This document shows, piece after piece, positions 6,766-49,110 of a stretch of 64,000 nt of DNA. The stretch is from Rebecca billardiae RCC1528. Taxonomy: Eukaryota > Protista > Haptophyta. A program made the translations under genes and the position numbers. Below the pieces are notes generated by a model. That model worked only from the letters and a program-made list of their open reading frames with translations, was not told the DNA's origin and made no database searches. Position 1 is the stretch's first letter. The number at the start of each line of letters is the position of its first letter. The stretch spans positions 1,240,001 through 1,304,000 of the forward strand of contig OZ251246.1 of NCBI GenBank assembly GCA_965240325.2. The letters are read 5' to 3'.

Positions 6766-7264
6766 GTCGCGCCTTTGCCGCCTTCGATGACGCGCCGTTT
6801 GCCTGACGACGATTGGTGACTAATTCTATGATTTAAAGACACAGGCACGAGGGCGCAGCTCTCCTGATTCGTCTGTAGTGGTACTGGTCGAAGCTTGCAG
6901 CAGTTGCAGTGGTGTGAGCGCGTTGATGTTGGTCCCCATGGCGGATGTCGTTGTTGTCGTCGTCCGGACGTCGTCAGGCCCACCAGGAAGTGCATGGGTA
7001 CGAAAGCAAAGGCGAGTGAGCATGTTGGCGTCGGCCAGGCCGTCCCCTACTTGGTCACTGCTCTGACGAGCTATTTGTTTTTATTTAACAAAAAAGTGTT
7101 GATGATGAAAAGTTACCACGAGCAGCCCGGATCACCCCCCGGTGGGCGGGCCTTGGCGCACCCGGCTAAGCCGAGTAAGCGCGGGCCGTAGTGATCACCG
7201 CGGATCGCGGTCGTCTACGAGTGCACCCGGGAGCGAGACGCCCGAACTGCTGGCGAGCCCTTAC

Positions 7265-7330
7265 GACAGCGTGCCACGGTAGGGTAATAAGCCGTAAGAG
7301 TTACGGCTTACCCTACTGTGGCACGCTGTC
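7265..7330. repeat. Near-perfect ~30-bp-stem inverted repeat (hairpin)
   Basis: GACAGCGTGCCACGGTAGGGTAA(TAA)GCCGTAA-gag-TTACGGCTTACCCTACTGTGGCACGCTGTC; one mismatch and a 3-nt bulge. Confidence 0.9.
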
Positions 7331-7525
7331 ACGGTGTAGTAGTACATATATATACCCGCCTCGTCAGACAGTTCGTCCCTGACGAAATTAATGATGACTG
7401 CCGAGCTGCGCCCGCCTGGCTCAGGTCGACTGTGAGCGAGCGAGGCTTCCCGCGCGGTGCCGGTCTGCGACTGCGAGCCGTGCGCGCGCCGTCGGCGTCC
7501 ACGCGGCACGGGCCGTGCGCGGCGC

Positions 7526-9019
7526 TTACACGTCCGGCAGCACGCACTGCGGGCGGGGGCGGCGCGCGGCGTGGCGCGGCGGCGCGTCCGGTGAGCCCTC
7601 GCGCGCGCGCCTCGCGCGTTGCTGCGCGCGCGTTCCGCCGCGCGCACCGTCTCCATGATCTTGGCGGTGACGGAGTAGGGGTCCATGTTGGACGCGGGGC
7701 GGCGGTCCTCGAAGTAGCCGCGCTTGTCCTTCTCAGTCATGCGCGGGATGCGCACGGAGGCGCCGCGGTCGGCGACGCCCCACTTGAACTGGTGGATCGA
7801 GGCGGTCTCGTGCTTCCCCGTCAGGCGGCGCTTGTTGTCCTCCCCGCCCGTCGGGTCGTACGCCTGGATGTGCTCCTGCTGCTTGCCGGGCGCGCCCAGC
7901 CGCTCCATGTACTTCTCGATGGCCGCGTACCCGCCCGCGCGCCGGGTGGCGTCGGTGGAGACGTTGGTGTGGCAGCCCGCGCCGTTCCAGTCGCCGGCGA
8001 TGGGCTTGGGGTCGAAGGTGACGACGATGCCGAACTCCTCGCACACGCGCACGAGGAAGTAGCGGCTCATCCACAGCTGGTCGCCCGCCTCGATCCCGTC
8101 GCACGGGCCCACCTGGTACTCCCACTGGCCCGGCATCACCTCGCCGTTGATGCCCGAGATCTTGATGCCCGCGGCGAGGCAGCACTTGTAGTGCGCCTCG
8201 GCGACGCGGCGGCCGAACGCGTTCTCCGCGCCGATCGAGCAGTAGTACGGGCCCTGCGGCTTCGGGCGCCCCGGCGCCTTGGGCCAGCCGTACGGGGTCT
8301 CGCGCTGCAGCGAGGTGCCGCGGAAGGCCGTGCCCGGGTGCGAGCGCTCGAAGAGCGTGTACTCCTGCTCGATGCCGAACCAGGGGTGCTGCGAGGCGCA
8401 CTTCTTCATGATCTTCTCCGCCGCCGCGCGCGTGTTGCCGTACACGCCCGGCTTGTTCGGCAGCGGCGCGCCCAGCCCGCGCGGGCCGTTCGGGTCGGGC
8501 AGGTAGTTCTCGCACAGCACCACGACGTGCGGCCGCCCGCGGAAGGGGTCGTCGTACACGGCGACGGGCTTGAGCAGCACCTCCGAGTCGCTGCCCGGCG
8601 CCTGGTTCGTCGACGAGCCGTCGTAGTTCCACACCGGCAGGTCCGCCGGCTTGCTGCCGGGCGCGAGGGCGCGCGCGCGCGCGCCGCGCGCGGTCAGCGG
8701 TGCGCCCGCGCGCGCCGCGCGCGCGCGGCGGCGCCGGTCGCGCGGCGCGACGCGCGAGCTGCCGGGCGTGGCCGTGATGTGCCCCCGATCCACGCGGCGC
8801 GCGCGCGCGCCGCGCGTCGCGCCGCGCTCACAGGCTGGAGCCGGCCTTGAGCGTGCGCGTCTTGCAGCGCATCTCCATGTCCGAGCCGAGCCAGACGTAC
8901 TCGGCCTGGATCTCGCCGTCCTTCGCCTTGAGGTCCATGAACTTCTCGACGATCTCAAACTTGAGGTCGGTGTACGGCGGGATCACCTCCTCGGGGGGGA
9001 CGCTGCCGCAGTTGCCCAT
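7526..9019 (-). CDS. GLN1: Glutamine synthetase type II, 3 exons (9019-8832, 8653-7648, 7546-7526)
   Basis: [98 protein letters not shown]. Two GT-AG introns; intron 1 has a CTGAC branch point. Protein ends ...IMETCVLPDV*. Confidence 0.96.
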
Positions 9020-9784: not shown

Positions 9785-10471
9785 TCACAAGCCGGCGAGC
9801 AGCTCGTCCGCGGCCGCGGCCGCGGCCGCGGCGTGCGCGGCGGAGCCCGCGCCGGCGGGCGCTCCGTCCGCTGCGCCGTGAGCGTGTGCGCCGTGTGCGC
9901 CCCGCCCCTCCGCCTCGTCGCCGCTGCACGCGCCGTCGGTCGAGGGCGCGTGCGCGTCGTGCCCGCCGTGCTCGTGCTCATCGAGCGCGCCGAGCGGCCC
10001 CGCCGACAGCGGGAACGGCAGCGAGTCGTCGGTGAGCGCCAGCGGCAGGTGGGAGAGGTCGACCTTGGTGAGGTAGTCGTCGTCCGCGCCCATGGCGCCC
10101 ATGGTGCCGTCTGCGCCCTCGCCGCCCAGCTGCAGCGCAGCGCCCACGTCCGCGTGGCCCATCAGCACGTCGTCGGCGAGCGCGCGGACCTCCTCCTCCA
10201 TCAGCGCGGCGTCGACGCCGCAGCCCGCCGCGCCGCGCGCGCGCCCGCCGCGCCCGCCGCGCCTGTCCGCGCTCGCGCGCGCGGCGGCCATGTAGGCGCG
10301 CGCGCGGCCGAGCTCGCTGTCCTCGTCGTCGTCGTCGGGCAGCTCGGGGTGGCGGGGGAGGGCGTAGTCGTCCTCGTCCTCCGTGCCGCTGTCCGCGCCG
10401 TCGTCGTCGTCGTACTCCTCGCCCTCGTACTCCTCACCCTCGCCCTCGCCCTCCTCCTCCTCCTCCTCCTC

Positions 10472-10535
<64 letters not shown>

Positions 10536-12982
10536 GTCGCAGCGGCCGCGGCCGCGGTCGCGGCCGCGACGCCGATGGCGGCGGCGCGCCTGCGGCGCTG
10601 GCGGCGCACGCCGCCGGCCTCGCCCATCGCGGCGGCGGCGGCTGCGGCGCCGAGCGGCGCGCGCAGCCTCGCGCGGTGCGCCCTCCGCCCTCCGCCGCCG
10701 GCCGCGCGCAGCCGCTGCCCCTGCGGCTGCGCGCCGCCCTCCGCCGCCCTCGCCTTCTCGTCGGCCGGAATCATGCGCACCGCGTTGAGGTTGAGCACGG
10801 CCGCGCGGTGGTGGGGCGCGACGGCGGCGCCGGGCGGGGCCTGCTTGAGCGCGGACTCGGCGAAGTTGAGCACCGCCTTCGGCCCGTGCAGCTGCAGCGC
10901 GAACTCGTCGTACGCGCGCGCCGCCTGCAGCTCGGTGCCGAAGCAGCCGATCACAACCTCCTTGCCGTTGCGCTTGACGCGCGCCTTCCACCGGCCGTGC
11001 CGCTTCGAGACGCCCCGGTAGAGAGAGGTCTTGCGCGAGGTGACGCGGCCGCGGCCCTCGGCGGTGGGCGAGTCGGAGCCGTCGCGCGAGCCGCCCTCGT
11101 CCGCGCCGGTGCTGCCCCCGTGCTCCGTCCACCCGCCGCCGCCGTCCGAGCCCGGGCCGGGCCGCGCGGCGAGCGCAAACGCGGCGCGGCCCGGGCCGGC
11201 GCCGAGCCCGCGCGCGCCGCCCGCGCCGCCCGCGCCGAGCGAGCCGGCGGCGGCGGCGGCGTCGGACGCGTCGGCGGCGGCGGGGCCGACGGCGTAGCCG
11301 TAGCCCACGCCGCCGCCGCCGGGGCCCGCCACGCCGGCCACCGGCGGCGAGCACACGCCCAGCGGCAGCGGCGCGCCGTCCGACGGGATCGGCGTGGCGC
11401 ACGCGACCGCTGCCGCGCCGCCACCTGTGCCGCCCGTGCGCGCGCGCTTGGCCAATGAGCCGGAGGGCTTGGCGCCGCGCGCGCCGCCGCCGGCGCTGCC
11501 GCCGCCGGGCGGCACGAGCGGCGCGGCGAGGCGCTGCGGCGTGCACCCGGCGGTCGCGGCGACCGCCGCGGCCACCGCCGCGCGGTTGCGCGCGCCGCCG
11601 TGCGCGCGCTGCGCCTGCTCCAGCGCGCGGGACGCGGGCAGCTCCGAAGCCTCCGCCCACGCGCGCGCGCCCGGCGGCACGCTCGACGCGCGCGCCGCAG
11701 CGTCCGCCGCGTCCGCGGCGGCGCACGCGGCGGAGGGCGCGGCGGCGGCGTGGGCGGCGGAGGGCGGCACGGGCGAGCCGCCCGCGCGCAGCGCTGCGTG
11801 CGCCTGGTCGAGGTGCGCCATCACAAACGCGCACGCGTCCGCGCGCGAGACTGCGGAGAGAGAGGAGCCGCGCCGGCAGGAGGAGTCACGGCGCAGCAGC
11901 AGGCTGCCGCCGCCGCACCCGCACGCGGCGGCGGCGGCGGCGCGCGGCGCGGAGGCGCGCGGGAGGGCGTCCGCGTCGGGCTCGGGCTTTGGCCCGAGCT
12001 TGCCGCCCCCGTCCTCGTCCAGCCGCGCCGCCGCGTCCGCCGCGTCGAAGAGGTCGGCACCGTGGGCGCCACCGTCAGCGCTCACGCCGCACCCGCCGAC
12101 GTGCGTCGAGGCCTCGAGCCAGGCGAAGGCTGCGCGCGCGATGGAGGACTCGTCGGCGGGCGCGTCGGCGTGCGTGCCCGCCAGCCGCGCGAGCCCCAGC
12201 CCGAACGCGCCGCGGCAGAAGCACGCAGGGCACGTCCAGCGCGCGCCGGCCGCGCCGGCCGCGCCGGCCGCGCCGCCGCGCGCCCGCGCGCCCGCGCCGG
12301 CCGCGGCCGAGCGCGCGCGCGCGCCGCCGGCGCGCTCGTCGGCGGCGGGCGCAGCGTCGTCGGCGTCGCTGAGCTCGAGGTGCAGCGCGCGCAGCACGGG
12401 CAGCGCGCCGCTCGCCGCCGCCTCCGCCGCCGACGTCGCGCCGCTCCCTGAGCTCGAGACGCCGACGGCGCCGGGCGGCGACGGCGCCTCGTGCGCGCCG
12501 TGGGCGCACAGCGCGCGCACGCACGCCGGGTGGAAGGCGGCGGCGCAGGCCTCGCACGCGCGGAGCGCGTCGTCGTCGCCCTCGTCGCCCGCGCCCTCGC
12601 CGCACAGCCCGCACGCCTCCGCCGCGGCGAGCCGCCCGCCCTCCGCCGCCGACTCGGCGGGCGGCGCGCCCTCCGCGGGCCGCACGGCGTGCAGCGGCAC
12701 CCACTCGTCGACGCCCAAGGGCGCGCCGTCGAAGCGGACGAGGACGCGCGTGGCGGTGGCGAGCACCACGGTGGCGTGGCGCGCGCGCCCGGCCGGGCCC
12801 GCCGCCGGCCGCCGGCCGCCGCCGCCGCCGCTCGCGGCGCTGGGCGCGGGCTGCTCGCTGAGCACGAGCACGGCCGTGCCCGCGGCGAGCGGGCGGGCCG
12901 GGAGCGAGTCGGCGTGGGCGCAGGCGCCCGAGGCGGCGCGAGCGTCGCCGCGCCGCGCGGCCGCGCCGCCGCCGTCGCGGCC

Positions 12983-13013
<31 letters not shown>

Positions 13014-13195
13014 GCGCCGCCGCCGTCGCGGCCGGCGGCGCCGCCCGCGCCCGACGCGGCGGCGCGCGCGGCGGCGGCGGCGGCGGCGCGCTCGTTCTTG
13101 GCGGATTGGAGCGCCGCGACCTTCTCGGTCGGGCGCACGGATCGCTTCCCCAGCGCCGACACCCGCGGCCCCGGCGGGGGTGGCCGCGTGGGCAT
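9785..13195 (-). CDS. Chromatin/transcription regulator: Tudor-knot/chromo-barrel-like + PHD finger + AP2/ERF DNA-binding domain + acidic tail
   Basis: VLVRFDGAPLGVDEWVP (Tudor-knot-like); CGLC...CEAC...FHPAC...WTCPAC (PHD); YRGVSKRHGRWKARV...IGCFGTELQAARAYDEFALQLHGPKAVLNF (AP2, about 10860-11020); poly-D/E tract. First ATG is at 13195 (the track's 13366 start is TTG). Confidence 0.85.
10452..10533 (-). repeat. Coding trinucleotide repeat (GAC)n(GAG)n giving poly-Asp/Glu
   Basis: Plus strand (TCC)n then (TCG)n run; translates as a long Asp run followed by a Glu run. Confidence 0.9.
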
Positions 13196-13871
13196 CGTGT
13201 CGGGAGAGGGTGTGGCGGTGGTTGCAGGGTGCGTTAGGCCTGGGCGCTCCCGCGTCCGTCCTCCGCCCGGTGGCCTTTCTGGGCTGGCGCTGGCGCGTTT
13301 ACGACCGCTGGCTGGGCGCCCCTTGGCAGGGGCGCTTGCGGCCTCATGCGGCTTGGTCAAGGTCAATCATCCTAACGGCCCCCCTGAAGAGGGCCTATTG
13401 ACGAGACCTGTCCCACTTTCCCTGAGTCCGGCTCGACGCCGATTGGCCGAGGCCGATGCACGCGTCCGCGAGGCTAATTGCAAACCGCCAAGAAAGCCTC
13501 GCGAGCGCGCCGTCTGTCTCATCATTCGTGGGGTCTCTACTATGATGCAATCTCGCCCAATACGCCGAATAAGCGCCTCGCGGGTAGTTGGCTCTCATTC
13601 TGGTTCGTTCTGGTAATCTGGTTCGTTCTGATGGGTCGGCCTCCGCCGCGAGGGCCCCGGACTTCCCGCTATTCCGGATTCTAGCCGCGCCCTTCCCGGA
13701 CTGCCGACCTCTTGAGCAACAGGACCGCGGCGCGCAGCAGGTCCAGCAGGGAGCGCTGCAGCTGCCGCTGAGTCAACAGGCGGCGCGGCAACTCGAGACG
13801 CGCGCCCGGGCGCGCATCCAGGCGCGGCGGCGGGCGGTTCACGAGGCGGCGGCGCGCGCGGGCGGCGCGGC

Positions 13872-15612
13872 ATGGCGGCGCCCATGTCCCAGAAGACCGC
13901 CATGTCGCTCTTCAAGCGGATGAACTACTTCAAGAAGCTGCCCGAGGACCTGACGATCTCGACCGCGCACGGCTCGGTCATGACGATCGTCGGCCTCATC
14001 GCGATGGTGGTGCTGTTCGGGCTCGAGCTCAGCGCGTTCCTCGACGTGAAGGTGGAGACCGCGATCGAGGTCGACGACACCGTCGACACGATGATCCGCG
14101 TCAACTTCAACCTCACCGTCGACGACATCCCGTGCGAGTTTGTCTCGGCCGACATGACGGACGCGACCGGCACGTACGAGCACAACATCACGCGCCGCAT
14201 CCAGAAGACGCGGCTGAGCGCGCTGCGCCGGCAGATCGCGATCCACCCGGAGATGGGCGCGGGCAAGCCCGCGTACGTGCTCCCCTCCGACGACGAGCTC
14301 GCCGCGCTCGAGGAGAAGCGGATCGCGGCCGCGGCCGAGCGGCAGGCGGCGGAGGCGCAGGGCGCGGACACGAGCAAGCTGCTCGACGTGCACGGCAACC
14401 CGCACGGCGAGGTGGTGGCGCTCTCCGAGTCGTCGCTCGCGGACTACGTGCGCACGCACGACATGGTCTTCGTCAACTTCTTCGCGCCGTGGTGCCACTG
14501 GTGCCGCGAGCTCGAGCCCATCTGGGACGCGGCCGCGGCCAAGCTGCCCGAGCTGCACTACGGCGAGCACGTCAAGATGGCGAGCGTCGACTGCGTCGCG
14601 CACGTCGAGTTCTGCCGGACGATGCACATCCGCGCGTTCCCGACGCTGACGCTGTACTCGGACCACACGATGGACCACTCGCTGCTCTACCGCTCCACGC
14701 GCTCGACCGAGGCCATCCTCGACTTTGTGGAGACGAACGCGCAGCGGCACCACGTGCCGCACGAGGACAAGGCGGAGCACGAGAGCAAGGTGGCGGCGCT
14801 CTCCACCAAGCAGACGCACGGGCACGGGCCCGAGGCGTGCATGATGTCGGGCGTGCTCGTGGTGAAGAAGGTGCCCGGCGCGATGCACATCAAGCTGCAC
14901 TCGCCGCAGTACTCGCACGCTGCCGAGCTGATGAACGCCTCGCACGTGCTGCACCACCTCTCGTTTGGCGGCGCGCCCGACGAGAGCGCGCCGCTCGAGA
15001 AGCGGCAGAGCGCGACGCAGATCCTCAACGTGGGCAGGTCGCAGGTGGCCGACGTGCCGTTCGTCACGGACGCGATGGGGCGCACCTTTGTGCACTACCA
15101 CAAGGTGCGCGCGCAGCAGCAGCAGCAGCGCGCGCGCGCCGCCGGCGCGGCGCGGCGTTGGCCGCGGCCACGCTCACGCGCTCGCGCCCTCCGTCCCTCC
15201 GTGCTGCCTGCCTGCCTGCCGCAGGTGGTGGCCAAGGTGCGGCAGAAGCTGAACGGCGCCACGTTCGGCTCGTACGCGTACACGATGCACTCGTCCACGC
15301 ACGAGGAGGTGGAGGAGGCGCTGCCCGCCATCAAGTTCGTGTACGACTTTGCGCCGATGAAGGTGCGCCGCGCGGCGGCGCGCGCGGCGCGCGGCGCGGC
15401 GGCGCGGCTGAGCCCGAGCGCTCGCCCGCGCCGTGCGTGCGCGCCCTGTGCGCGCGCGCGTGCTGCAGGTCGTGTACAAGGAGTCGTCCACGCCCACGTA
15501 CCACTTTGTCACCTCGCTGTGCGCCATCATCGGCGGCTTCTTCACGCTGCTCTCGCTCGCCGAGTCGTCGATTCACTTCTCGATCGAGACGATCTCAAAG
15601 AAGCTCATGTGA
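13872..15612 (+). CDS. ERGIC/Erv41-Erv46 family protein with internal thioredoxin domain (PDI-C / PDIL5 type); 3 exons (13872-15104, 15225-15362, 15469-15612)
   Basis: N-terminal FKKLPEDLTISTAHGSV + TM + VNFNLTVDDIPCEFVSAD; Trx FFAPWCHWCRELEPIW; COPII C-domain CMMSGVLVVKKVPG, PAIKFVYDFAPM, TSLCAIIGGFFT. Spliced C-terminus ends KKLM* (KKXX ER-retrieval signal). Confidence 0.92.
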
Positions 15613-16030
15613 GACGCAGCATGGACAGTCTCAGTCTGCCGCTGCGCGGGGACAGAGTGCGCAATGTGCGTGTCACACTGGTCCACTGCCGATCGGCTCT
15701 CCGGCTCTGATGAGGCAGACAGCCGGCGCCATATTCGTGATCGGACCGGCGGCGCGGCTGAGCCTGAAGACTGAGGGGCCATCATTGGACAACGTCGTAG
15801 ACTGCCGCCAATGATCAGAACGCTGCGTTGCGGAACCCGCGTTGCGCACATCATAACGCCTGGGAGCTGACGAGCGGTGTGCGTAGCTAGTTATAGCTAA
15901 CTATATAGTGCGCTTATTCACTCAGTCAATGCTGGGTAACGGGGCGTAGTGGAAATGTCGTTTCATGGGACCGCGTAACGTTACTGTGCGACAAGTTTTG
16001 GGGCGCGGGCGGCACTCCTCTGCGGGCGCC

Positions 16031-18016: not shown

Positions 18017-20665
18017 TCAGATCTCGGGCGGGCGCAGCCGCGACGACGACGCCTGCTGACTCGGCGGCGCCGAGCCCGACCGCGCTGCCGGCGGCGGCGG
18101 CGCGCCGCCCTCGGCCGCGCCGTGGCCCCCGTAGCTGCTGGCGCGAGGATCGATCGGCGGCGCCTCGACCGACGGCCTGTCCGAGTGTATGGGCGAGAGG
18201 CCGAGGCTCTCGTCGCTGCCCTCCTCCAGCTCGACGCCCGCGAGCTCCGTGTACGAGGGCCGCGCCTGCCGGCCCGCAAAGCCGGGCTCGCCCTTGGCCG
18301 CGCCGACGGCCTGCAGGAAGCGGCTCGCGCCCGAGGGCGAGGGCCTGATGTCGCCCGAGGGGCGCGACGCGCCGGGCGGCGTCGAGCCGGCCGCGAAGTT
18401 GACGCCGGGCTTCTCCGCGCGCGGCGACGGCGGCGCGGCCGTCTCGTCCGGCAGCGCGTCCGGGCGCGAGGCGCCCTGCCCTCCGGTGGGCGTGCGGTGG
18501 TACGGGAAGCGGCTGTTGCCGAGGGCGGGCGACTGCCCGCGCGACGCGCCGCGCGAGGGCTTCTGCGAGTTGCGCCGACTGCCCGCCAGCACGGCGATCG
18601 GCGCGGCGACGGCGGACCAGCGCGAGGGCGCGGAGGTGCGCGGCGTGAACGGGTTGGACCAGCGCGGCATCCGGCCGCCGTACCCGCGGCCGCGCGGCGT
18701 CTCCGGGCAGTGCGGGCTCATCGGCGTGTCCTCGTGCTCCGCGCCGTGCGGCCGCTGCAGCGGCTCGTCGTCGTCGTCGGCAAAGCCGCCGTGCGAGCCG
18801 CGCATGTCCGTGGCGGCGGAGGCGCGCGCGCGGCTCTTCGTGCGGCCCGAGACGGTGCGGCGGAACACCCCCGCCGCGCGTCCGGACGACTTGGTCACCT
18901 TGGCCGCCTTTGCGTCGATGTCGCGGTCGGGCAGCACGCGGAAGAGCAGCAGCGTGTGCAGCGTGGTGATGCCGGGCAGGCACGCGAGCACGAGCGAGGG
19001 CAGCGCCACGCCCGCGAAGAGGACGAGGTCGACGAGCGCCCAGTACGCGAGGACCGTGTCGTGCAGCGCGGTCTGCGCCGTGAAGCGCGCCGTCGCGAGC
19101 AGCCGGCGCGAGGCCGAGATGAGGTCGGCGCCGTCGTCCGCGTCGCTGGTGGCGGGCACGAGCCACGCCATCACCGAGGTGCCCACCTGCGCGCTCAGGT
19201 AGCGCAGGCAGAGCAGCACGAGGCCGGCGGCGTGCGCGGCGGCGGGGGAGCGCGGGCGCGCGCCGCGCACGAGCCGGCCCCAGCTGCCCCACGTGAGCAG
19301 CACCCACAGCTCCACGCCGTGCGCGCACAGCAGCGCGAGCGCGCACAGCACGTGCACGCCGCGCAGCGCGGCCTCCGAGCGGCACGCGCGAGCGCACGCG
19401 CGCGCGCCAAACGCGACGAGCGCGACGAGCACGATGGCGGGGAGCGGCGAGGCGAAGAGGAAGAGCTCGAGCGTCGCGCGCGCCGTCTCCGCCTCCGAGA
19501 GCACGTCGATCAGCATGTCGCGCGCCAGCGCGAGCAGCGCGCACAGCGCCATCGTGCGCCTGCCCGGCACGATGTAGGACGTGTACGGCCGGTTGTTGTT
19601 GGCGGCCAGCTCGGCGCGCGCCCACGCCACCCAGCCGTCCGCGCCCGGCTCGAGGAGGAAGGCGGCGCCGTCGCGCACGTCGGCGGCGAGCAGCCTGCGC
19701 AGCGCGAACTGGTGCGGGTTGAAGACGAACGGCGCGTACAGCCACGAGAGCACCACCGAGCCCATCGCCAGCCAGAACGAGAAGCCGGGCAGCACGATCG
19801 GCCGCGCGCTCAGCGCGAGCGCGAGGATGGCGGCCAGGTCCGCGCCCGGCAGCATGTTGGACTGGCCGAACGCGCGGTACAGCGCGGAGAGCGGCTGGCG
19901 CGTCGCGCTCATCGAGCGGCCGGTCGCGATGTACGACGCGCCGCCGCTCGAGATCTCCTTCTTGAACGAGTAGCCCGTGAGCTGCGCCTGGAAGGCGAAG
20001 AACATCCACGAGAAGGTGAGCAGCTGCTTGCCAATCATCACGACCGCGGCGATCACGCCCTGGTTGATCGAGAGCTCGAAGAAGAGCGGCATCGCCTGCA
20101 CGGTGACGAAGAGGAGGAGGAGCGGGCCGAACTGCGCGTCGATCAGCGCCGACGCGATCGACGCGTACGACGCGCTCGGCTCGCCGCCCGAGAGCGCGTA
20201 GTCGACGTGGCCGATGGCGAGGTCGCACAGCACGAAGTAGAGCAGCGTGAACGCAAACACCCAGATCGAGAGCTCCATCAGCACGGGGCTGAGGTAGTAG
20301 CCCGTGTGCGCGTAGTAGAAGCCGAGCATGCGCGAGAACTGCAGCCGCGTGCCCAGCCGGTAGCTCTGCCGCGTGAGCGTCATCTCCGCCGCGCCGCGGC
20401 TCAGCTTGGAGACGAACTTCATCTGCGAGACGAAGGACATCTCGCGCCCCTTGCCCACCTGGAAATACTCGCGGTGCACCACGTTGCCGCCGCGCAGCAT
20501 CAGGTCCATCCCGGCGAACACGTCCTCGGAGAGGTTGAGCCCCTTGGTCGCCTTGGACACGCCGCCCTGCGCCATCATCGTCAGCTTCTCCTGCGCGCCC
20601 CCCGGGGGGGAGGGGGCGCGACGGCGCGCGCGCGCGTCAGCCCAGCGGCGCGGCGCAGCGCGCAA

Positions 20666-20708
<43 letters not shown>

Positions 20709-23700
20709 GCGCGGCGCGCGCGGCGGCGCGGCGCGCTGTGCGCGCGCCATGATGTCGGGGTGGCCGTAGTACTGGCGGGAGAGGAGCGGGCGGTCCATCG
20801 TGCGCTGCATCATCGTGCCGAACACGTACTCCGACGTCGCCGAGAAGTTCGCCACCGTGCCGAGCGCCGAGTAGATGTGCTCGCGGAAGCCGACGATGGA
20901 GACGCGCTCGCGCGTGTTGTTGATCTCGGCGCCAAACTCGGCGAGCACGTTGCCCACCTTGAGCGCCTCCTCGAGGTAGCCCTCCTGGTTCGCGTCGATG
21001 GTCTGCAGCAGCCGGCCGCGCACGTAGATCAGCGCGTGGTTCTGGTTGTCCCCCTTCCCGTCGCCGAGGATCGGGTGGCCCGGCAGCTCGACGCGGTAGC
21101 GCGGCACGCGCCGCAGCGGGTTGTCCGAGCGGTGCTTGCACGAGCCGTCGATGAGGCACGAGTAGTAGCGCACGCCGTGCGGCGCGGACGGGGCGTCCTC
21201 CTCCTCGATGTACGCGATCTTGAGCTTGGGCCACTCCTCGAGCATCGCCTCCACGCCGCCGAGGTACTCGTCGTCGAAGTGGTGGTAGCGCTGCATCGAG
21301 ACGACGCACGAGAACTTGATCGACACGATCGCGCGCCGCTCGGCGCGCGAGAGCGCCGGGCGCTGCGCCTGCAGCAGCAGGTCGTACGCGCGCTCGAAGG
21401 CCATCATGCCCGCGACGGTGCGGTACAGCGACTGCGTGCGGTGCGACGCCCACTTGCGCAGCTCGAGCAGCGCCTCCTCCTTCTTGTGCGGCGTGTCGGG
21501 CACGCCCGCCAGAGCCGCGCCGCCCTCGAGCTCGGACGCGCCAACGCCGCCGTCGTCGTCGCTCGAGTCGTCGTCGTCGTCGTCGTCGGCGGCGGCGGAG
21601 GGATACGGCGAGGCGAAGGGCGAGGCGCGGCGGACGCCGTCGAAGGGCGAGGCGCGGCGGGCGCCGACGCCGCCGGCGGCGGAGGAGGCGCTGCCGCGGC
21701 GGCCGCCCACGCCTCCGTCGACGCTGCTGTGGCGGCTGCCGACGGCGGCGGCGGCGCCGCCGTTGCCGCCGTTGCCACCGTTGCCCGCGGCGGCGGCGGC
21801 GGCGCCGCCGACGGCGCCGGTGAGCGAGAAGCGGCGGCCGAACTTGGCGGCGACGGACATGCGCTTGAGCCGGCGCGCCGCCGTCCGGTCGCCCATCTCC
21901 TGCACCTTGCCCGCGAGGTGCGCGCACACAAAGCTCCACGCGCCCTCGCCCACGCGCCCGCGGAAGTTGTTCAGCTCGTCGGGGAAGTACTCCATCAGCA
22001 GCGAGATGAGCGGCTCGGGCACCTGCGCGGCGGGGTCGACGCCCGCCTTGGCCGAGCGCCCGCCGCCGCCCGCCGCGCCCACCTCCGCCTTGGCCAGCTC
22101 CTTCTCCGAGACGAGGATGGTCTCGCCGTAGTGCGGGATGAGCACCGAGAAGGTCGGCAGCGCCTCGACCGGCAGCGGCGACGGCATGCGCGCCATGCCG
22201 AGCGTCTGCATGAAGAAGGTGAGGCGGCGGCGCGCCTCGGACGAGGCGGGGAGCAGCGCGTCCACGTGCTTCCGCGCGCCGCCGCCCTCCGCCGCGCCGC
22301 GCTCCTCGCGGAAGATCTCGGGCACGAGCAGCTCGCGCACGAGCGGCGCGCCCGGCAGGCTGGCCGAGCCGCCGCGCGGCTCGTTCAGCCCGGTGCCGGT
22401 CGCGGAGCGGAGCTGCAGGCCGGCGGGCGGCGCGTCGGCGTCGTCGCGCCCGTCGACGCCGCCGTACTCGAGCCGGCGCAGCTCGTCGAGCGAGAGCAGG
22501 TCCGTCTCGAACATCGAGTGCACGATCGCGTTCCACAGCCGCGCCCACTTGCGCTCGAGCGACGGGTGCAGCCCCTCGTCCGAGGCCGACGCGCGCCCGC
22601 CGTGCTCCGCGCCCTTGTCGAAGGCGAAGATGCGGCGCACGGCGGCGGCGGGGAGCTCGGAGAGGCGGCGGAGCTGCTGCAGCTCGCGCGCGCACGTCGG
22701 GTTCGCGCCGTGCAGGATGTACGCGCCGCGCGCCGTGCCGAAGAGGCAGACGCCGAGCACGTACCAGTAGTAGGTGGACGAGCAGTGCACGCACAGCGCG
22801 TCAAACCACACGAGCGACTGCTGCAGCACGCGCGCGATCAGCGCGCGCGAGCCGTGGAGCTCCCAGTGCAGCCGCAGCTGGAAGAGCGGGCGGAGCGGCT
22901 GCGCCGCCTCCAGCCGCGCCGTCGCCACCGCCGCCGCGCGCAGGATCACCTGCGTCTCCGTCACCGACTTGGCGGCGAAGACGATGAGCCAGAAGAGCGC
23001 CATCGGCATCAGCGTGCCCCTGGGCGCGTACATGTGCGCGTCGAACTGCGCGGTCTTGCGCCGGATGCCCGGCGGGCGGAAGGTGGTGCGCAGCATCACG
23101 ATGGTCGAGAACGCGACGTACAGCACGCGCAGCACCACGTTGTTCGGCAGCCGCGCCAGCGTGGCGAAGAGCGAGACCTGGATGACGTACGGCAGCGACT
23201 TGTCCGCGTCCAGCAGCGTGTGCCACACCGACGAGCCAGGCTTGATCCGGATCTTGGCCATGTCGGCGACGAGGTGGACGAGGCCAGGGACGAGGAAGCC
23301 GGCGTACACGGCGAGCTCGGACGCCGGCTCCGCCCACGTGCCGAACGAGAAGCGGCGCAGCGCGAGCAGGTACAGCCCGTAGAAGGAGACGAAGTGCACG
23401 GTGACGACGCGCACGTACGCGACAAAGCAGCAGTGCCACGAGTGCACCTCCGCGTGCCGCTTGCAGCCGGACAGCGAGCGCGCCCAGTCGGCCTCGGCGA
23501 GGCGCGCCCAGCGCTCCGCCGCGGGCCAGTCCACGATGGGCAGCCCCTCCTTGTCCACGATCTTGCCGATCCGCTCGGGCGTCCACGTCATCTCGTTCCA
23601 GTCGTCGTAGTTCTGCCGCGCCTTGTGCTCGGGGAAGGGCCGCTCGAGCGGCGCGCGCTTCTTGGAGAAGCCGGAGAAGTTGGCGTCGAAGATGTGGGCG

Positions 23701-26700
23701 TAGAGCGGGCGCACGTACTGCGTGAGGTACGTGCCCGGCGGCGCGTCCGCCTCCTTCGGCTCGCTCTCCTCCCACGCGTCGTAGTCCGCGTGCTCCGAGT
23801 TGAAGGTGTCGTGCTCGGTCGAGGCGGGCGCGATCTTGTCCGCGTTGTGGTTGCGCGCACACTCGAAGAAGAAGCAGAGGATCTCGGGGCAGAAGCGGAT
23901 GTTGCCCGCCTCGCCCCAGAGGCACAGGTACAGCGCCATCTCGTGCAGCCGCTGCACGTGCGACGGCGCGCGCCACTGCACGAACACGACGCGCTTGCGC
24001 CGCGCGAACGAGAAGAGGCCCGCCGAGGTGTCGAGCCAGCGCTCGAACGACTCGAACATGAGCTGGTGCAGCTGCGTCGCCGCGTCGTACTCGTCGCCGC
24101 ACGCGGCGGTCTGCGCGTGCCACAGCTGGAGCAGGTGCGAGTACTGCGAGTGCACCGAGTCGCGCTGGAAGCCGAACACGCGGCCGAGGTGCTTGAACAG
24201 CGCCTGCAGCTGCTCCTGCGACGTCTGGCACACCTGCGGCCGCGGCGCGCAGTCGCCCGGCTCGCTCGGCTTGAACTCGGCCGCGGTCTCGGCGGCGCGG
24301 ATGAGCGAGGCGCGGCGCACGCCGCACGCCGCGTGGACCGGCTGCACCGCGTCGCCGCCCGCCGCGCCGCCCGGCGCCGCGCCGCGCCCGCCGCGCCCGA
24401 GCCGGCCGCGCACCGCCGCGCGCGCGGCGCCGAGCCGGCGCGCGCACGAGCGGCGCACGCGGCCGCGCACGCGCGGCCGCACGAGCGGCACGAGCAGGCA
24501 GGCCCAGAGCACGCCGGCGAGCACGACGTACGCGGTCCACGCGGGGCGGAGCGCCTGGCACTGCAGCGTGCGCACGAGCAGGTTGCAGCACTCCGCGCCG
24601 CCCGTCCCCCGCTCCGACCAGACGCGCAGCACGTGGTTGGCGCGCTGCCGCACCGAGCAGCCAAAGTAGCGCCCGCCCGGCGCGACGTCGTCGCACGCCG
24701 CCGCCGCCTCGGCGGAGGCGTTGCGCGCGCGCGCGCACTGCAGCTCGATGAGCTCGAAGAGCTCGTCCACCGACGACGCCTCGAGCGTGAGGCACGTCCC
24801 CGCGTGCACGCCCGCCGACTCGTTGCCCAGGCCGCGCGCGGGGATGCGCGCGCAGCGGCGCGCCCAGCCCTTTGCGCGCACGAGGCAGCGCGGGCCGGTC
24901 CAGCCCTCGTCGCACGCGCACGTCGCGGTGGCGTTGGGCGCGGTGGGGTCGGCGGCGGGGACGCACGTGCCGTGCGCCCCGCAGCGCAGCACCTCCGCCG
25001 CCTCCTCGCCGCCCTCGTCCTCCGCCGCGATCGTCACCTCGTTGCACGTCGCGCCGCCGGCGGTGAGCGGCTTGGTCGGGTCCTCGGCCAGGATGGGCAT
25101 GTACCGCGAGCGGTGCGCCTCGATGAACGCGCGCGTCGGGCGGGCGGGCGGGTCGCACCCGACGTTGCGCGCGCCCTCGCGCTGGTACACGCGCACGTAC
25201 TCGACCTCGTACGCCACGGGCAGCATCTCGCACAGCTCGGCGAGCCACTGGCGCGTGTTGACGCCGTCGACGATGCACGTCGTGCACTCGGTGCGCTTGC
25301 AGTCGACGCAGCACTCGCACAGCGACTCGTCGCAGTACGGCCAGCCCCAGCGCGGCGACATGTCGAGGTTGAGGATGAGGTACATCGGCTCGGTCGGCAC
25401 CTCGCGCGGCAGCAGCGTCCCGTCGTCCAGCCCCTCCGCCGGGTCGAACGTCACGCGCCGCTCGGTGGTGAGCACCGAGGCGGGCACGTGGAACTGCTGC
25501 GCGCCGTCGAGCGTGAAGCGCACAAAGCCGTCGGCCCCGCCCACCACCTCGCACTGGTAGAGGTGCTGCTCCTCGAAGTGGGTGCGGCCGAGGCCCGTGA
25601 TCGCCGAGAACGCGTCGGTGTGCAGCCGCTTGCCCTGCGGGCAGTCCGAGTGCCCGTACCCCTCCTCGAGGCAGTAGTCGTCGCCCTGGGCGAGCGCGCG
25701 GCGCGCGGCGCGCGCGGAGCGGGCGGGCGGCCGCCGCGCGCGCGCGCGGGAGGGAGGGGGCGTGGGCGCGGCGTGGGCGGGCGAGCAGCGCGCGCGGCGC
25801 GCCGGGTGGCGCCCGCCCGCGCCCGCCGCCCCGCGTGCGCGCGCTCCGCGCGCGCGCGCTGGCGCCGCGCGTGCGTGCACCCAGAACTCGTAGTTGATGC
25901 TCACGTTGTACGCGGTGCCGTAGATCGGGCCGTACGCCTCAGCGCTCGGGTACAGCTCGGGGTAGTACTCGAGCTCGGAGCGGCCGTCCGGGCCGGTGAC
26001 GTTGCGCGGCAGGCAGCCCAGCCGCGGCCGCTCCTTCGCGTTGTGCGGCTGCCCCGGCCCCGCCTGCACGCTCGTCGCCACCATCGGCAGCGCGACGTCG
26101 ATGCGGCGCAGCACGCCCTCGTCCACGCTGTCGCACGCGCCGCTGTCCAGCTTGTTCGCGCCGTAGTCGTAGCGGAAGGAGCCGGGCATCACCTCGACGA
26201 TATCGATCTCGGGCGCGCCGCGCCCCGTCCCGTTGTTGCACGCGTCCAGCTCCTGCAGCCCGTACTGGTTCGCGTCGTGGTCGGGCTGCGCGGGGCACTG
26301 GTCGTAGTTGAACGGCCAGATGTGGTCGGTCGAGAGCTTGAACGTCGCGCGGCCGAGGTTGCCCATCATCCAGAAGGCGGGCCACAGGCCGGACTGGTCG
26401 TGCCGGCCGGGCATCTTCGCCGAGAGCTCGACGTAGCCCTCGGTGAAGCAGAACTTGTTCTGCGCGCGCGCGCGCGCGCGCAAAGAGCCCGCCCTCAGCG
26501 CGCAGCCCTCGGCCCTCGGCCCTCGGCCCTCAGCCCTCAGCCCTCAGCCCTCAGCCCTCAGCCCTCGGCCCTCGGCCCTCGGCCCTCAGCCGTCCGCCGT
26601 CCGCCGAGCCGAGGTGCGCAGGGGGGCGCGCGCGGCGCGGCGCGGCGCGGCGCGGCCCGGCGCGGCGGGGCGTGCGCGGCGTGCGCGGCGTGCGCAACGG

Positions 26701-27154
26701 CTGCGCGCACGCGCCGTGCGCGTACCCACGTCTGCAGCATCGGCGTCTGGTAGTGGCGCATGACGTCGCGGTCGTGCTCCCAGTGCCAGTCCTGCTCAGA
26801 CGCGCTCAGCAGCAGCTTGCCGCCCTTCGTGGTGGCGAGCGACGAGTTGTACGCGTTGTACTGGTAGTTGGAGTACACGGGCGACTCGAGCCCCGTCCAG
26901 ATCGGGTCGTCGCCGTCGAAGAAGGTGCGGCCCTCCTGCTCGAACTCGTCGGACATCACGAGCTCGTACCGCACGCCGTTGATCACCTTGGTGCGCGCAG
27001 AGTCGGGCGTGTCCTCGTCGATCCACTCCTCGGGGTCGGCGTCGGGCGCGGCGTCGGCGCGGGCCGCCGGCGCCGCCGCGAGCGCGAGCAGCGCGCCCAG
27101 CGCGAGCGCCGCGCGCCGCACGCGGGCGCGGCGTTGGAGCCGCCCCGTCGGCAT
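18017..27154 (-). CDS. Fusion of KRE6/SKN1-type GH16 beta-glucan transglycosylase + EGF-like + TM + FKS1/callose-synthase-type 1,3-beta-glucan synthase (GT48); 4 exons (27154-26726, 26459-25881, 25685-20748, 20590-18017), ~2,840 aa
   Basis: Signal peptide; LVMSDEF..GRTFFDGDDPIWT, MLQTW|NKFCFTEG, GLWPAFWMMGNLGRA, GRGAPEIDIVE, PMYLILNLDMS, EYVRVYQ (KRE6/SKN1); CACDEGWTGPRC (EGF-like); LYLCLWGEAGNIRFCPE (FKS1 domain 1); EARRRLTFF, WASHRTQSLYRTV, LGDGKGDNQNHA, QTIDANQEGYLEEALK, GFREHI, YGHPD, GGVSKA..LNLSEDVFAG, EYFQVGKGRE (GT48). Confidence 0.93.
26505..26591. repeat. 7-bp minisatellite (GCCCTCA/GCCCTCG)n in intron 1 of the glucan synthase
   Basis: About 12 tandem copies of gccctcR read directly. 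Confidence 0.9.
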
Positions 27155-27381
27155 GGGTGAGTGAGGCCGCCACATCCACTTTATTATTTCTTTGCCACAT
27201 CCGCCTCGTGAGCCCCCGCCCGCGCGGCCGCCCTCACGGCCTATCATAAACCGTACTACTGTCAGTACTTTATGCCGTACGCCTCGAAAAGGTGCGGCAC
27301 GGCTGACAACAGCTGCTCGTTGAGATGCGATCTCGATAGATGAATGATGAGCCTAGAGATATTTGTTTTCTCAATCGACTA

Positions 27382-45349: not shown

Positions 45350-45748
45350 CGGCGCGAGCGAGGCGTGCGCCGCGTGGACGGATGGCGACGCCCGGCTCAG
45401 CGCCGCGCGCGGGGCGGCGGGGCGGCGGGGAGCCGCTGGCAGCGGTGCCGCGGCCGGGTGGGCCGTGGGCGGTGCGTGCACTCTCAACTCCGAACTCGTG
45501 TGTGTGGTCCGGGGCCTGTCGTGATCGAGCCGCTTTGATGATCAGTGATCAGTGATCAACAAAAAACGGAGCGAGATTCGCATACTGTATGTGTATGGCA
45601 ACGGCATAGGCCCCGTCACATACGGTAACAGTATGCAGCTTGACTGAAATAGTCAATGACTGACCCGACCGCTCGCCGACCAGCCCGCCCCGGCCGGCGC
45701 GGGGGGGCTGAGTAACGTACGCCGGTAGGGGCGAGCGAGTGCGCAACC

Positions 45749-48493: not shown

Positions 48494-48525
<32 letters not shown>

Positions 48526-48528
48526 ACC

Positions 48529-48564
<36 letters not shown>

Positions 48565-49076: not shown

Positions 49077-49110
<34 letters not shown>

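What the first reader, a model, noticed from the sequence alone, without database searches (positions are those of the whole stretch)
18017..27154. One-polypeptide beta-glucan polymerise-and-branch machine: KRE6/SKN1 GH16 fused to an FKS/callose synthase
Seen: exon 3 runs without a stop from the C-terminal half of a KRE6/SKN1-type GH16 domain (PMYLILNLDMS, EYVRVYQ), through an EGF-like Cys motif and one TM helix (AYVVLAGVLWACLLVPLV, about 24485-24535), into FKS1 domain 1 and the GT48 catalytic region. The GH16 catalytic ExDxxE (EIDIVE, about 26193-26210) and the GT48 SED motif (about 20523-20531) are both intact. Established: fungal FKS1 (beta-1,3 synthase) and KRE6/SKN1 (beta-1,6-glucan) are separate genes, as are the diatom chrysolaminarin synthase and its KRE6-like transglycosylases. 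Inference: the signal peptide and TM place the GH16 in the lumen where the synthase extrudes its chain, so a tethered enzyme could add beta-1,6 branches during synthesis of the storage glucan. A similar fusion may already be reported from other haptophytes; I cannot check that here.
Basis: partly seen in the sequence, partly recalled or inferred. Interest (0 to 1): 0.9.

Follow-up and report, generated by a model that had tools for sequence, protein, structure and literature searches.

The report
KRE6-type GH16 fused to glucan synthase
This alga has one 2,839-residue gene that joins a lumen-facing KRE6-type glucan-remodelling enzyme, through a glucan-binding module and one membrane helix, to an intact beta-1,3-glucan synthase; a similar fusion is on record only for oomycetes, and this one seems to have arisen separately.

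Summary
A four-exon minus-strand gene (27154-18017, 2,839 aa) encodes, in order:
- signal peptide
- SKN1/KRE6 GH16 (EIDIVE intact)
- EGF
- a CBM43/X8-like module
- one TM helix
- FKS N-domain
- GT48, with all Fks1 catalytic motifs kept

Two lines of evidence show the join is real.
- Third-position GC is 0.98-1.00 through every 20-codon window of the TM-to-FKS linker, while introns are flat.
- At least 15 divergent protein clusters carry the same collinear junction. They include a complete MMETSP transcript and one-ORF contigs.

No sequencing run was listed, so this organism's own transcript is untested.

The architecture is not unprecedented. Oomycete proteins (Hyaloperonospora, Aphanomyces) have SKN1 followed by GT48, and a 2026 paper calls that fusion oomycete-restricted. 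Here both domain trees, with AU tests, place the oomycete fusions apart. Their linker is multi-pass, without EGF or CBM43. I therefore read this as an independent variant.

The synthesise-and-branch mechanism is inferred. It is consistent with the S. pombe Ghs2-Bgs3 complex.

First readers of this scan noted at least five similar fusions on other pieces of the same genome. I did not check those notes.

Novelty: new variant of a known kind. Interest: moderate.

The parts
18017..27154 (-). Whole gene: 4 exons, 2,839 codons plus stop
   Evidence: Spliced model has a single stop, at its end. GC3 is 0.98-0.99 in all exons.
26726..27154 (-). Exon 1: start codon, signal-peptide-like segment (aa 15-33, ending ARA|DA) and the N-terminal part of SKN1/KRE6 GH16
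   Evidence: Pfam SKN1_KRE6_Sbg1, 65 bits. Hydropathy. Codon bias starts at 27154, and upstream ATGs lie in sequence with many A/T third positions.
26460..26725 (-). Intron 1 (GT..AG, 266 nt), with a 7-nt tandem repeat at 26491-26605
   Evidence: Homologues read ...QTW|NKFCF... without a break.
25881..26459 (-). Exon 2: GH16 core, with catalytic ExDxxE (EIDIVE) at 26193-26210
   Evidence: The motif E-I-D-(I/V)-x-E is kept in all 8 aligned fusions.
25686..25880 (-). Intron 2 (GT..AG, 195 nt, in frame and without a stop, so hidden inside the long ORF)
   Evidence: GC is flat at 0.92/0.91/0.92 over the three positions. This stretch is absent from all homologues.
25059..25685 (-). Exon 3, first part: C-terminal half of the SKN1/KRE6 domain, including its Cys-rich end
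24879..24986 (-). EGF-like domain
   Evidence: Pfam EGF_Teneurin, 27.2-27.3 bits against a cut-off of 24.3.
24540..24818 (-). CBM43/X8-like Cys-rich module (6 invariant Cys)
   Evidence: The same module is repeated 4-6 times after GH72 domains in P0092 and P0170. Profile A1 hits the C-terminal region (residues 359-429) of the GH72 enzyme 8PE1, which I read as its CBM43, at E=0.0015. The AF2 model has pLDDT 89.7. The best structural matches are the C-terminal regions of Gas2p and Gel4 that I read as their CBM43 domains, Z about 5.
24480..24533 (-). The only TM helix between the ectodomain and the FKS part
   Evidence: Hydropathy peak of 2.26. All window-type homologues have exactly one TM helix here.
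24249..24479 (-). Basic, low-complexity cytosolic linker (aa 739-815)
   Evidence: GC3 is 1.00 in every 20-codon window. There is no in-frame Met before the conserved FKS N-domain.
23430..24248 (-). FKS N-terminal (accessory) domain: FGFQRDS at 24156-24176 and Pfam FKS1_dom1 at about 23559-23951
22959..23429 (-). First TM cluster of the synthase
   Evidence: Hydropathy.
20297..22148 (-). Cytosolic GT48 catalytic domain, interrupted by intron 3. Motifs: PHYGE 22122-22136, GDGKGDNQNH 21036-21065, DAN 20988-20996, ED 20522-20527.
   Evidence: Alignments to yeast Fks1 7XE4/9ZTC. Residue roles come from PMC12715860. Coordinates.
20591..20747 (-). Intron 3 (GC..AG, 157 nt), with a dinucleotide repeat at 20678-20704
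   Evidence: P0001 reads ...GHPDIM|EKLTMMAQGG... without a break.
18932..20296 (-). Second TM cluster of the synthase
   Evidence: Hydropathy. Aligns to Fks1 residues 1204-1510.
18020..18931 (-). Low-complexity C-terminal tail of about 300 aa
   Evidence: GC3 is 0.98. P0001 also has a long, unconserved tail.

Best explanation
SHOWN. The locus is one gene. Its product runs, in order:
- signal peptide
- KRE6/SKN1-type GH16 domain
- EGF
- CBM43/X8-like module
- one TM helix
- short basic linker
- FKS N-terminal domain
- six-helix-type TM cluster
- GT48 catalytic domain
- second TM cluster
- disordered tail

Both catalytic centres keep their known essential residues. The same layout is conserved in a family of divergent proteins from marine protists.

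INFERRED. The signal peptide and the single TM helix put the GH16, EGF and CBM43-like parts on the non-cytosolic side, meaning the vacuole or endomembrane lumen, or the cell surface. The FKS N-domain and the GT domain stay in the cytosol, as in yeast Fks1.

The GT48 part would polymerise UDP-glucose into beta-1,3-glucan and push the chain through its own channel. The tethered CBM43-like module would hold the emerging chain. The GH16 would cut and re-join it by transglycosylation, adding beta-1,6 branches. That would yield branched storage glucan from a single polypeptide.

I put the gene being a true fusion at about 0.93. I put the branching mechanism at about 0.5.
For: - Domains: all are in one frame, and the model has one stop, at its end.
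- Codon signature: GC3 is 0.98-1.00 in all exons and in every 20-codon window from aa 700 to 880, while the three introns are flat at 0.81-0.92. Only 36 of 2,839 codons end in A or T.
- No room for a second gene: the first Met after the TM helix lies inside the conserved FKS N-domain, and the unconserved gap is only about 77 aa.
- Homologues with SKN1 + FKS1_dom1 + Glucan_synthase: P0001 (MMETSP transcript, marked complete, 2,721 aa), P0002 (7,452-nt contig holding one ORF), P0004 (intronless 7.7-kb ORF among other genes on a 19-kb contig), P0005 and P0008.
- Collinearity: P0002 aligns in one HSP over aa 43-1601. The TM helix and the FGFQxDS start of the FKS part line up in 8 proteins.
- Spread: 17 cluster representatives hold the junction.
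- GT48 residues: Y849/E851, K1082/N1085, D1102-A-N1104 and E1221/D1222 of Fks1 are all kept.
- GH16: ExDxxE is kept. The nearest solved relatives are GH16 laminarinases.
- CBM43-like module.
- Functional analogy: S. pombe Ghs2 (Kre6-like GH16) binds the GT48 synthase Bgs3, is modelled next to its extrusion pore, and both are needed for branched glucan (PMC13612389). PhTGS knock-down lowers haptophyte beta-glucan (PMC10543733).
Against: - No RNA or DNA run of this organism was listed. A single full-length transcript and protein are therefore not shown directly for this locus.
- In aa 740-780 all three codon positions are about 0.9-1.0 GC. An extra in-frame intron there cannot be excluded, though it would not break the fusion.
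- Neither enzyme activity was assayed. What Kre6-type GH16 proteins do biochemically is still debated (PMC13612389, PMC10543733).
- The compartment (vacuole or cell surface) is unknown.
- The CBM43 assignment rests on weak scores: E=0.0015, Z about 5, and Pfam X8 not significant on the window's own copy.
- The lineage was not established by my own tests.
Confidence: 0.75

Rival explanations
1. There are two adjacent genes: a stand-alone TGS (signal peptide, SKN1, TM, tail, as in Pleurochrysis PhTGS) followed by a separate glucan synthase. They would be read as one only because stop codons are rare in this very GC-rich DNA.
For: - PhTGS and the diatom TGS1/2 are stand-alone proteins with this N-terminal layout (PMC10543733).
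- GC-rich DNA gives long chance ORFs, for example the 2,126-aa antisense ORF and the stopless in-frame intron 2.
- No transcript data are available for this organism.
Against: - GC3 is 1.00 in frame right across the linker.
- Only about 77 unconserved residues separate the TM helix from the FKS N-domain.
- No Met lies before the conserved FGFQRDS motif.
- The junction is conserved and collinear in at least 15 divergent clusters, including a complete transcript.
Confidence: 0.04
2. The fusion is real, but the GH16 part does not add branches. It might act as a hydrolase that trims or releases chains and so controls chain length, or it might link glucan to another acceptor. The product might be a cell-surface or scale-associated glucan rather than storage glucan.
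For: - The nearest solved relatives of the GH16 domain are endo-beta-1,3-glucanases.
- Kre6 biochemistry is unsettled.
- Nothing tested here fixes the compartment.
- GH72-CBM43 relatives of the linker module are cell-wall enzymes in fungi.
Against: - Genetics in S. pombe and in Pleurochrysis link Kre6-type proteins to branched or beta-1,6-rich glucan.
- Reported haptophyte storage glucans are rich in beta-1,6 links.
Confidence: 0.2
3. The window-type fusion and the oomycete fusion descend from one ancient fusion, which was then lost or split in diatoms, fungi, plants and others. On this view the window shows only another member of the oomycete family.
For: - The domain order is the same: SKN1, membrane segment, FKS1_dom1, GT48.
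- Published GT48 and GH16_2 trees group haptophyte with stramenopile sequences (PMC7965971).
Against: - The GT48 and GH16 trees both place the oomycete fusions apart from the window-type ones.
- AU tests reject one clade of all fusions: p=6e-07 for GT48 and p=9e-06 for GH16.
- The oomycete linker is a 5-7-helix block without EGF or CBM43, whereas the window type has one helix.
- Caveats: these are quick trees, the groups were named after the trees were seen, many rows have no known taxon, and some 'solo' rows may be fragments of fusions.
Confidence: 0.12
4. An assembly mis-join brought a TGS gene and a synthase gene together.
For: The linker (24309-24489) is low-complexity, GC-rich repeat DNA, where assemblies can fail.
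Against: - Frame and codon bias continue across it.
- Independent sequences from other sources have the same junction.
Confidence: 0.01

Closest known systems
Oomycete SKN1/KRE6-GT48 fusion proteins (Hyaloperonospora arabidopsidis P0221, 2,643 aa; Aphanomyces astaci P0222, 2,439 aa; mentioned in PMC13612389, which cites Judelson 2017)
   Same: The domain order is the same: an N-terminal SKN1/KRE6 GH16, then a membrane segment, FKS1_dom1 and Glucan_synthase in one chain.
   Different: - The linker is a multi-pass block of 5-7 hydrophobic helices with a weak TM7S3/TM198-like match. It has no EGF or CBM43-like module.
- Both domains fall in other parts of the trees, and a single clade of all fusions is rejected.
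- PMC13612389 calls the architecture restricted to oomycetes. This locus and its relatives contradict that.
S. pombe Ghs2-Bgs3 synthase-remodeler complex (PMC13612389)
   Same: A Kre6-type GH16 on the outer side is paired with a GT48 beta-1,3-glucan synthase. The proposed synthesise-then-branch logic is the same.
   Different: - It is two separate proteins held together non-covalently.
- Ghs2 is type II, with a cytosolic N-terminus. Here the GH16 is N-terminal behind a signal peptide and is covalently joined to the synthase's cytosolic N-terminus.
Algal stand-alone TGS (Pleurochrysis PhTGS; Phaeodactylum TGS1/2) together with a separate glucan synthase
   Same: The layout is signal peptide, SKN1 domain, one TM helix and a cytosolic tail. 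The proposed role is in storage beta-glucan (PMC10543733; PMC8541152).
   Different: In those proteins the tail is short and the synthase is a separate gene. Here the 'tail' is an entire GT48 synthase.
Yeast Fks1 (PDB 7XE4, 8JZN)
   Same: It shares the FKS N-domain, two TM clusters around a cytosolic GT domain, and conserved ED, DAN and UDP-Glc-binding residues.
   Different: Fks1 has no lumenal N-terminal extension. The window protein has a low-complexity insert of about 130 aa in the GT domain and a tail of about 300 aa.
Fungal GH72 enzymes with a C-terminal Cys-rich region (Gas2p 2W61; Gel4 8PE1), which I read as CBM43/X8
   Same: A Cys-rich module next to a beta-1,3-glucan transglycosylase. 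The module here matches that region by profile and by fold. That these regions are CBM43 domains is from my own knowledge, not from the tool output.
   Different: - The partner enzyme here is GH16, not GH72.
- The match is weak. The window's own copy does not reach the Pfam X8 threshold.
S. pombe Ags1 (alpha-glucan synthase with remodelling activity in one chain; cited in PMC13612389)
   Same: It shows the same design principle of a synthase and a remodelling activity in one polypeptide.
   Different: It makes alpha-glucan using unrelated domain families. I did not examine it here.

Membership tests
GT48 (FKS / callose synthase) | Pfam Glucan_synthase and FKS1_dom1 above their curated cut-offs | tested here: met
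   Glucan_synthase scores 297.8 and 246 bits against a cut-off of 37.2. FKS1_dom1 scores 72.8 bits against 27.
GT48 (FKS / callose synthase) | Catalytic ED motif, DAN motif and UDP-Glc-binding residues of Fks1 (Y849, E851, K1082, N1085) | tested here: met
   All are conserved in the alignments to 7XE4/9ZTC. Residue list from PMC12715860.
GT48 (FKS / callose synthase) | Two TM clusters flanking a cytosolic GT domain | tested here: met
   Hydropathy clusters lie at aa 1089-1245 and 2081-2535. This is hydropathy only, with no dedicated topology predictor.
GT48 (FKS / callose synthase) | Beta-1,3-glucan synthase activity from UDP-glucose | not testable with these tools
   Needs an enzyme assay.
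SKN1/KRE6 family of GH16 | Pfam SKN1_KRE6_Sbg1 above its cut-off, covering the whole domain | tested here: met
   139.1 and 65.1 bits against a cut-off of 30, spread over exons 1-3. Homologues score 214-232 bits.
SKN1/KRE6 family of GH16 | GH16 catalytic ExDxxE | tested here: met
   EIDIVE at aa 227-232. The motif is kept in all aligned fusions.
SKN1/KRE6 family of GH16 | Type II membrane topology of yeast Kre6 (cytosolic N-terminus, C-terminal GH16) | tested here: not met
   A signal-peptide-like N-terminus is followed by the GH16 and then the TM helix, which is a type I layout as in algal TGS.
SKN1/KRE6 family of GH16 | Beta-1,6 transglycosylase or branching activity | not testable with these tools
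   Needs biochemistry. This is unsettled even for Kre6.
Oomycete GH16-GT48 fusion family | Same domain order in one chain | tested here: met
Oomycete GH16-GT48 fusion family | Multi-pass TM linker directly after the GH16 | tested here: not met
   There is one helix here and in all window-type homologues, against 5-7 in P0221, P0222 and P0115.
Oomycete GH16-GT48 fusion family | Common descent of both domains with the oomycete proteins | tested here: not met
   The clades are separate in the GT48 and GH16 trees. AU tests give p=6e-07 and p=9e-06. These are quick trees, so the result is provisional.
CBM43 / X8 | Cys-rich module of about 90 aa with the CBM43 fold and sequence signature | tested here: inconclusive
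   - Pfam X8 is not significant on the window copy. It gives E=0.0019 on one repeat of P0170.
- The profile hits the C-terminal region of 8PE1 that I read as its CBM43 at E=0.0015.
- Z is 5.1 to Gas2p residues 395-469, and Foldseek E is 0.3.

The most novel reading that the evidence does not exclude
Evolution may have coupled a Kre6-type GH16 to a GT48 synthase at least three separate ways: as a non-covalent complex in fission yeast, as a multi-pass-linked fusion in oomycetes, and as this EGF/CBM43/single-helix fusion in a haptophyte-type lineage. If so, the two enzymes form an obligate functional unit. The window-type protein, with its built-in glucan-binding module, would then be a self-sufficient single-chain synthase for branched beta-1,3/1,6 storage glucan. 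That would explain how haptophytes make their beta-1,6-rich glucans.
Probability: 0.4. Interest if true: 0.7.

Novelty: new variant of a known kind. Interest (0 to 1): 0.55.

Why it matters
How beta-1,6 branches and beta-1,6-rich glucans are made is a long-standing open question in fungi and algae. The 2026 S. pombe work argues that a Kre6-type GH16 works directly at the exit of a GT48 synthase.

A natural covalent fusion that arose independently of the oomycete one is 'Rosetta-stone' evidence for that partnership. It carries its own glucan-binding module. It also offers a one-gene system for expression, mutagenesis of either active site, and structure determination.

The finding corrects the published statement that the architecture is restricted to oomycetes. 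It also points to the probable enzyme of storage-glucan synthesis in an ecologically important group of marine algae. Laminarin-type glucans are a major ocean carbon pool (PMC8541152).

Tried and rejected
- Transcript evidence: the look-up of sequencing runs listed no RNA run and no run of any kind after several busy answers. Read laying could therefore not be used.
- Metagenome scan: the scan with the junction protein returned only two weak EGF-region matches.
- Protein atlas: the protein-atlas search gave only generic GT48 clusters, plus a bacterial GT2-GH16 cluster.
- Lineage: my third homology search, with the 579-aa GH16-to-linker piece, returned only 3 proteins and no named organism. I did not establish the lineage myself.
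- Oomycete citation: I tried to trace the citation for the oomycete fusion. Morris et al. 2009 (PMC2705460) has no mention of it in its text or held supplements. Judelson 2017 is not held. I confirmed the oomycete fusion directly from the proteins instead.
- Literature: searches for an algal or haptophyte report of the fusion found none. Subscription journals are not covered.
- Rejected readings: that the 1,948-codon ORF is a single exon (it hides the in-frame intron 2), and that the long antisense ORF 20373-26753 is a gene (its codon-position pattern is wrong).
Full report
**1. What is in the sequence**

The region is about 70-78% G+C, so long ORFs occur on both strands. On the minus strand there are three ORFs.
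- ORF 20637-26483 (1,948 codons) holds, in one frame, the C-terminal two thirds of a SKN1/KRE6 GH16 domain, an EGF-like motif, FKS1_dom1 and the first half of the GT48 Glucan_synthase domain.
- ORF 26558-27247 holds the start of the SKN1/KRE6 domain.
- ORF 18017-20665 holds the rest of GT48.

Reading the junctions against the homologue P0001 gives four exons: 27154-26726, 26459-25881, 25685-20748 and 20590-18020. The introns are 266 nt (GT..AG), 195 nt (GT..AG) and 157 nt (GC..AG). The product is 2,839 aa with one terminal stop.

Intron 2 is in frame and has no stop, so it hides inside the long ORF. It is absent from every homologue and lacks codon periodicity.

**2. Is the GH16-to-FKS join real?**

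ORF continuity proves little in this DNA, so I used two independent tests.

The first test is codon signature.
- Third-position G+C is 0.98-0.99 in all four exons. Second positions are 0.46-0.55.
- The three introns are flat at 0.81-0.92 at all positions.
- GC3 is 1.00 in every 20-codon window from aa 700 to 880. That covers the TM helix, the basic linker and the start of the FKS part.
- Only 36 of 2,839 codons end in A or T.
- A whole-window scan finds the same strand and phase on both sides of the junction.
- Within aa 740-780 all three positions are very GC-rich. A further in-frame intron cannot be excluded there, but it would not separate the two halves.
- The unconserved gap between the TM helix and the conserved FKS N-domain is about 77 residues. 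The first Met after the helix lies inside that conserved domain. There is no room for a gene boundary.

The second test is homologues.
- I searched with the GH16 region while restricting candidates to long proteins. This returned proteins carrying SKN1_KRE6 + FKS1_dom1 + Glucan_synthase. Pfam confirmed this architecture for P0001, P0004 and P0005.
- P0001 is an MMETSP transcript ORF marked complete.
- P0002 fills a 7,452-nt contig that has a 37-nt leader and a 269-nt AT-richer trailer.
- P0004 is an intronless 7.7-kb ORF among other genes on a 19-kb contig.
- P0002 aligns to the model in one HSP over aa 43-1601 at 48% identity.
- In a multiple alignment the signal peptide, EIDIxE, the Cys patterns, the EGF domain, the TM helix and the FGFQxDS start of the FKS N-domain all line up in eight proteins.
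- An exhaustive HMMER search of 1.84 billion representatives, followed by domain mapping, gave 17 cluster representatives that hold the GH16-to-FKS junction. One of them (P0115) is of the oomycete type.

I could not obtain transcript evidence for this organism. No run was listed, and a metagenome scan found no close relative.

**3. Are both enzymes intact, and what lies between them?**
- Alignment to yeast Fks1 (7XE4/9ZTC) shows conservation of Y849/E851 (PHYGE), K1082/N1085 (GDGKGDNQNH), the DAN motif 1102-1104 and the catalytic E1221/D1222 (LSEDVF). The review PMC12715860 lists these as the essential residues.
- The GH16 ExDxxE motif is kept. The nearest solved relatives of the domain are GH16 laminarinases.
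- Hydropathy finds an N-terminal signal-like segment, one strong helix at aa 720-738, and then the two TM clusters expected of an FKS.
- Fks1's N-terminal accessory domain is cytosolic. One helix after a lumenal ectodomain therefore gives a consistent topology. This step is an inference.

The 93 residues before the helix (24540-24818) form a module with six invariant Cys.
- The same module is repeated four to six times after GH72 glucanosyltransferase domains in two environmental proteins, and one repeat weakly matches Pfam X8.
- A profile of 24 copies hits the C-terminal region (residues 359-429) of the GH72 enzyme 8PE1 at E=0.0015. I read that region as its CBM43.
- An AF2 model is confident, with pLDDT 89.7.
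- Its best structural matches, though weak, are the C-terminal regions of Gel4 and Gas2p, which I read as their CBM43 domains, and the C-terminal domain of Ole e 9 (Foldseek E=0.3; VIA Z 5.1 over Gas2p 395-469).

I read this module as CBM43/X8-like, at about 0.75. An earlier first-reader note on another piece of this genome had suggested the same.

**4. How it probably works**

The following is inferred.
- The cytosolic GT48 domain makes beta-1,3-glucan and threads it through its channel.
- On the far side the CBM43-like module captures the chain.
- The GH16 domain cuts and re-joins it, creating beta-1,6 branches.

Support is by analogy.
- In S. pombe the Kre6-like Ghs2 binds the GT48 synthase Bgs3 and is modelled next to its pore. 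Both are needed for branched glucan (PMC13612389).
- In Pleurochrysis, knock-down of the stand-alone TGS lowers storage glucan. Haptophyte glucans are rich in 1,6 links (PMC10543733).

The main alternatives are hydrolytic trimming or chain release, and a surface glucan rather than a storage glucan. Neither is excluded.

**5. Comparison with what is known**

In diatoms and in Pleurochrysis the TGS and the synthase are described as separate proteins. The fusion as such is not new.
- PMC13612389 states that certain oomycetes fuse a beta-1,3-glucan synthase to a GH16, and calls this architecture restricted to oomycetes.
- I could not trace that statement in the cited Morris 2009 paper. I confirmed it from the proteins instead.
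- Hyaloperonospora P0221 and Aphanomyces P0222 carry SKN1_KRE6, FKS1_dom1 and Glucan_synthase in the same order.

The oomycete proteins differ from the window type in several ways.
- Their linker is a block of 5-7 hydrophobic helices, with no EGF or CBM43-like module. Every window-type protein has exactly one helix.
- In a GT48 tree, and separately in a GH16 tree, the oomycete fusions sit apart from the window-type fusions.
- AU tests reject a single clade of all fusions, with p=6e-07 for GT48 and p=9e-06 for GH16.

There are caveats. These are quick LG+G4 trees. The groups were named after the trees were seen. Most rows have no taxon. Some 'solo' GH16 rows may be fragments of fusions.

I therefore regard independent origin as likely, at about 0.8, but not proven.

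Literature searches found no description of this fusion in haptophytes or other algae. The library lacks most subscription journals.

**6. Lineage and paralogues**

I did not establish the organism myself. Earlier agents' notes on this genome call it a very GC-rich haptophyte, and one calls it 'Pavlovales-type'. First-reader notes report at least five further KRE6-GT48 fusions, and one other hydrolase-GT48 fusion, on other pieces of the same genome. I treat these notes as leads and did not check them.

**7. Verdict**
- The architectural interpretation is supported. The mechanism is plausible but untested.
- The finding is a new variant of a known kind.
- It widens a fusion thought to be confined to oomycetes, adds a glucan-binding module to it, and gives independent genomic support to the emerging Kre6-Fks partnership.
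- Interest is moderate (0.55).

Noticed in passing
window 25686-25880: A 195-nt GT..AG intron that is in frame and has no stop. A plain ORF scan reads straight through it and adds 65 spurious Ala/Arg/Pro-rich residues. In this genome it can be told apart only by its flat GC over the three codon positions and by its absence from homologues.
   Followed up: yes
window 20591-20747 and 26460-26725: Intron 3 uses a GC donor (GC..AG) and holds a (GA)13 repeat at 20678-20704. Intron 1 holds about 14 copies of a 7-nt repeat at 26491-26591, extending to 26605 in the 21-nt-period call.
   Followed up: partly
window 18017-27154 (whole gene) and 20373-26753 (+): Codon bias is extreme: 98.7% of codons end in G or C. 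The antisense strand carries a 2,126-aa ORF with the wrong codon-position pattern, so it is an artefact of base composition.
   Followed up: yes
window about 21476-21857 (aa 1613-1740): A low-complexity insert (Gly/Ala/Ser runs and a poly-Asp stretch) lies inside the cytosolic GT48 domain and has no counterpart in P0001. GC3 stays at 0.93-1.00, so it looks coding. Its role is unknown.
   Followed up: partly
P0092 (1,076 aa) and P0170 (883 aa), environmental proteins: Each is a GH72 glucanosyltransferase followed by four to six tandem copies of the same Cys-rich CBM43-like module found in the window protein. By my recollection, fungal GH72 enzymes carry only one CBM43; I did not check this here.
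   Followed up: partly
ESM Atlas cluster, rank 37: A bacterial (Armatimonadota) cluster combines GT2 glycosyltransferase domains with a GH16 domain in proteins of about 860 aa. This may be a prokaryotic analogue of a synthase-plus-GH16 fusion.
   Followed up: no
PMC13612389, discussion and references 88-89: The paper says the GT48-GH16 fusion is restricted to oomycetes and cites Morris et al. 2009. That paper's held text and supplements contain no mention of glucan synthase, SKN1 or KRE6.
   Followed up: yes
window 45616-51589: ORFs of about 1,950-1,980 aa on both strands, each starting with ATG. There is no Pfam match for the minus-strand ORF (the plus-strand one was not scanned) and no codon-position periodicity over most of the span. 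This may be repeat or non-coding GC-rich DNA.
   Followed up: no
window 3048-5453 (+), 7264-8958 (-), 9788-13366 (-), 13872-15707 (+), 50026-52635 (+): Neighbouring genes by Pfam, in the coordinate order given: Mg-chelatase/AAA-lid protein, glutamine synthetase, AP2-domain protein, ERGIC_N + thioredoxin + ERV protein, and DAP-epimerase domain protein. None has an obvious link to glucan metabolism.
   Followed up: partly
L001 (19-kb metagenome contig, 70% GC): The fusion homologue P0004 is an intronless 7.7-kb ORF in a compact gene array that includes a UCH protease and WD40 proteins. The organism is unknown.
   Followed up: no
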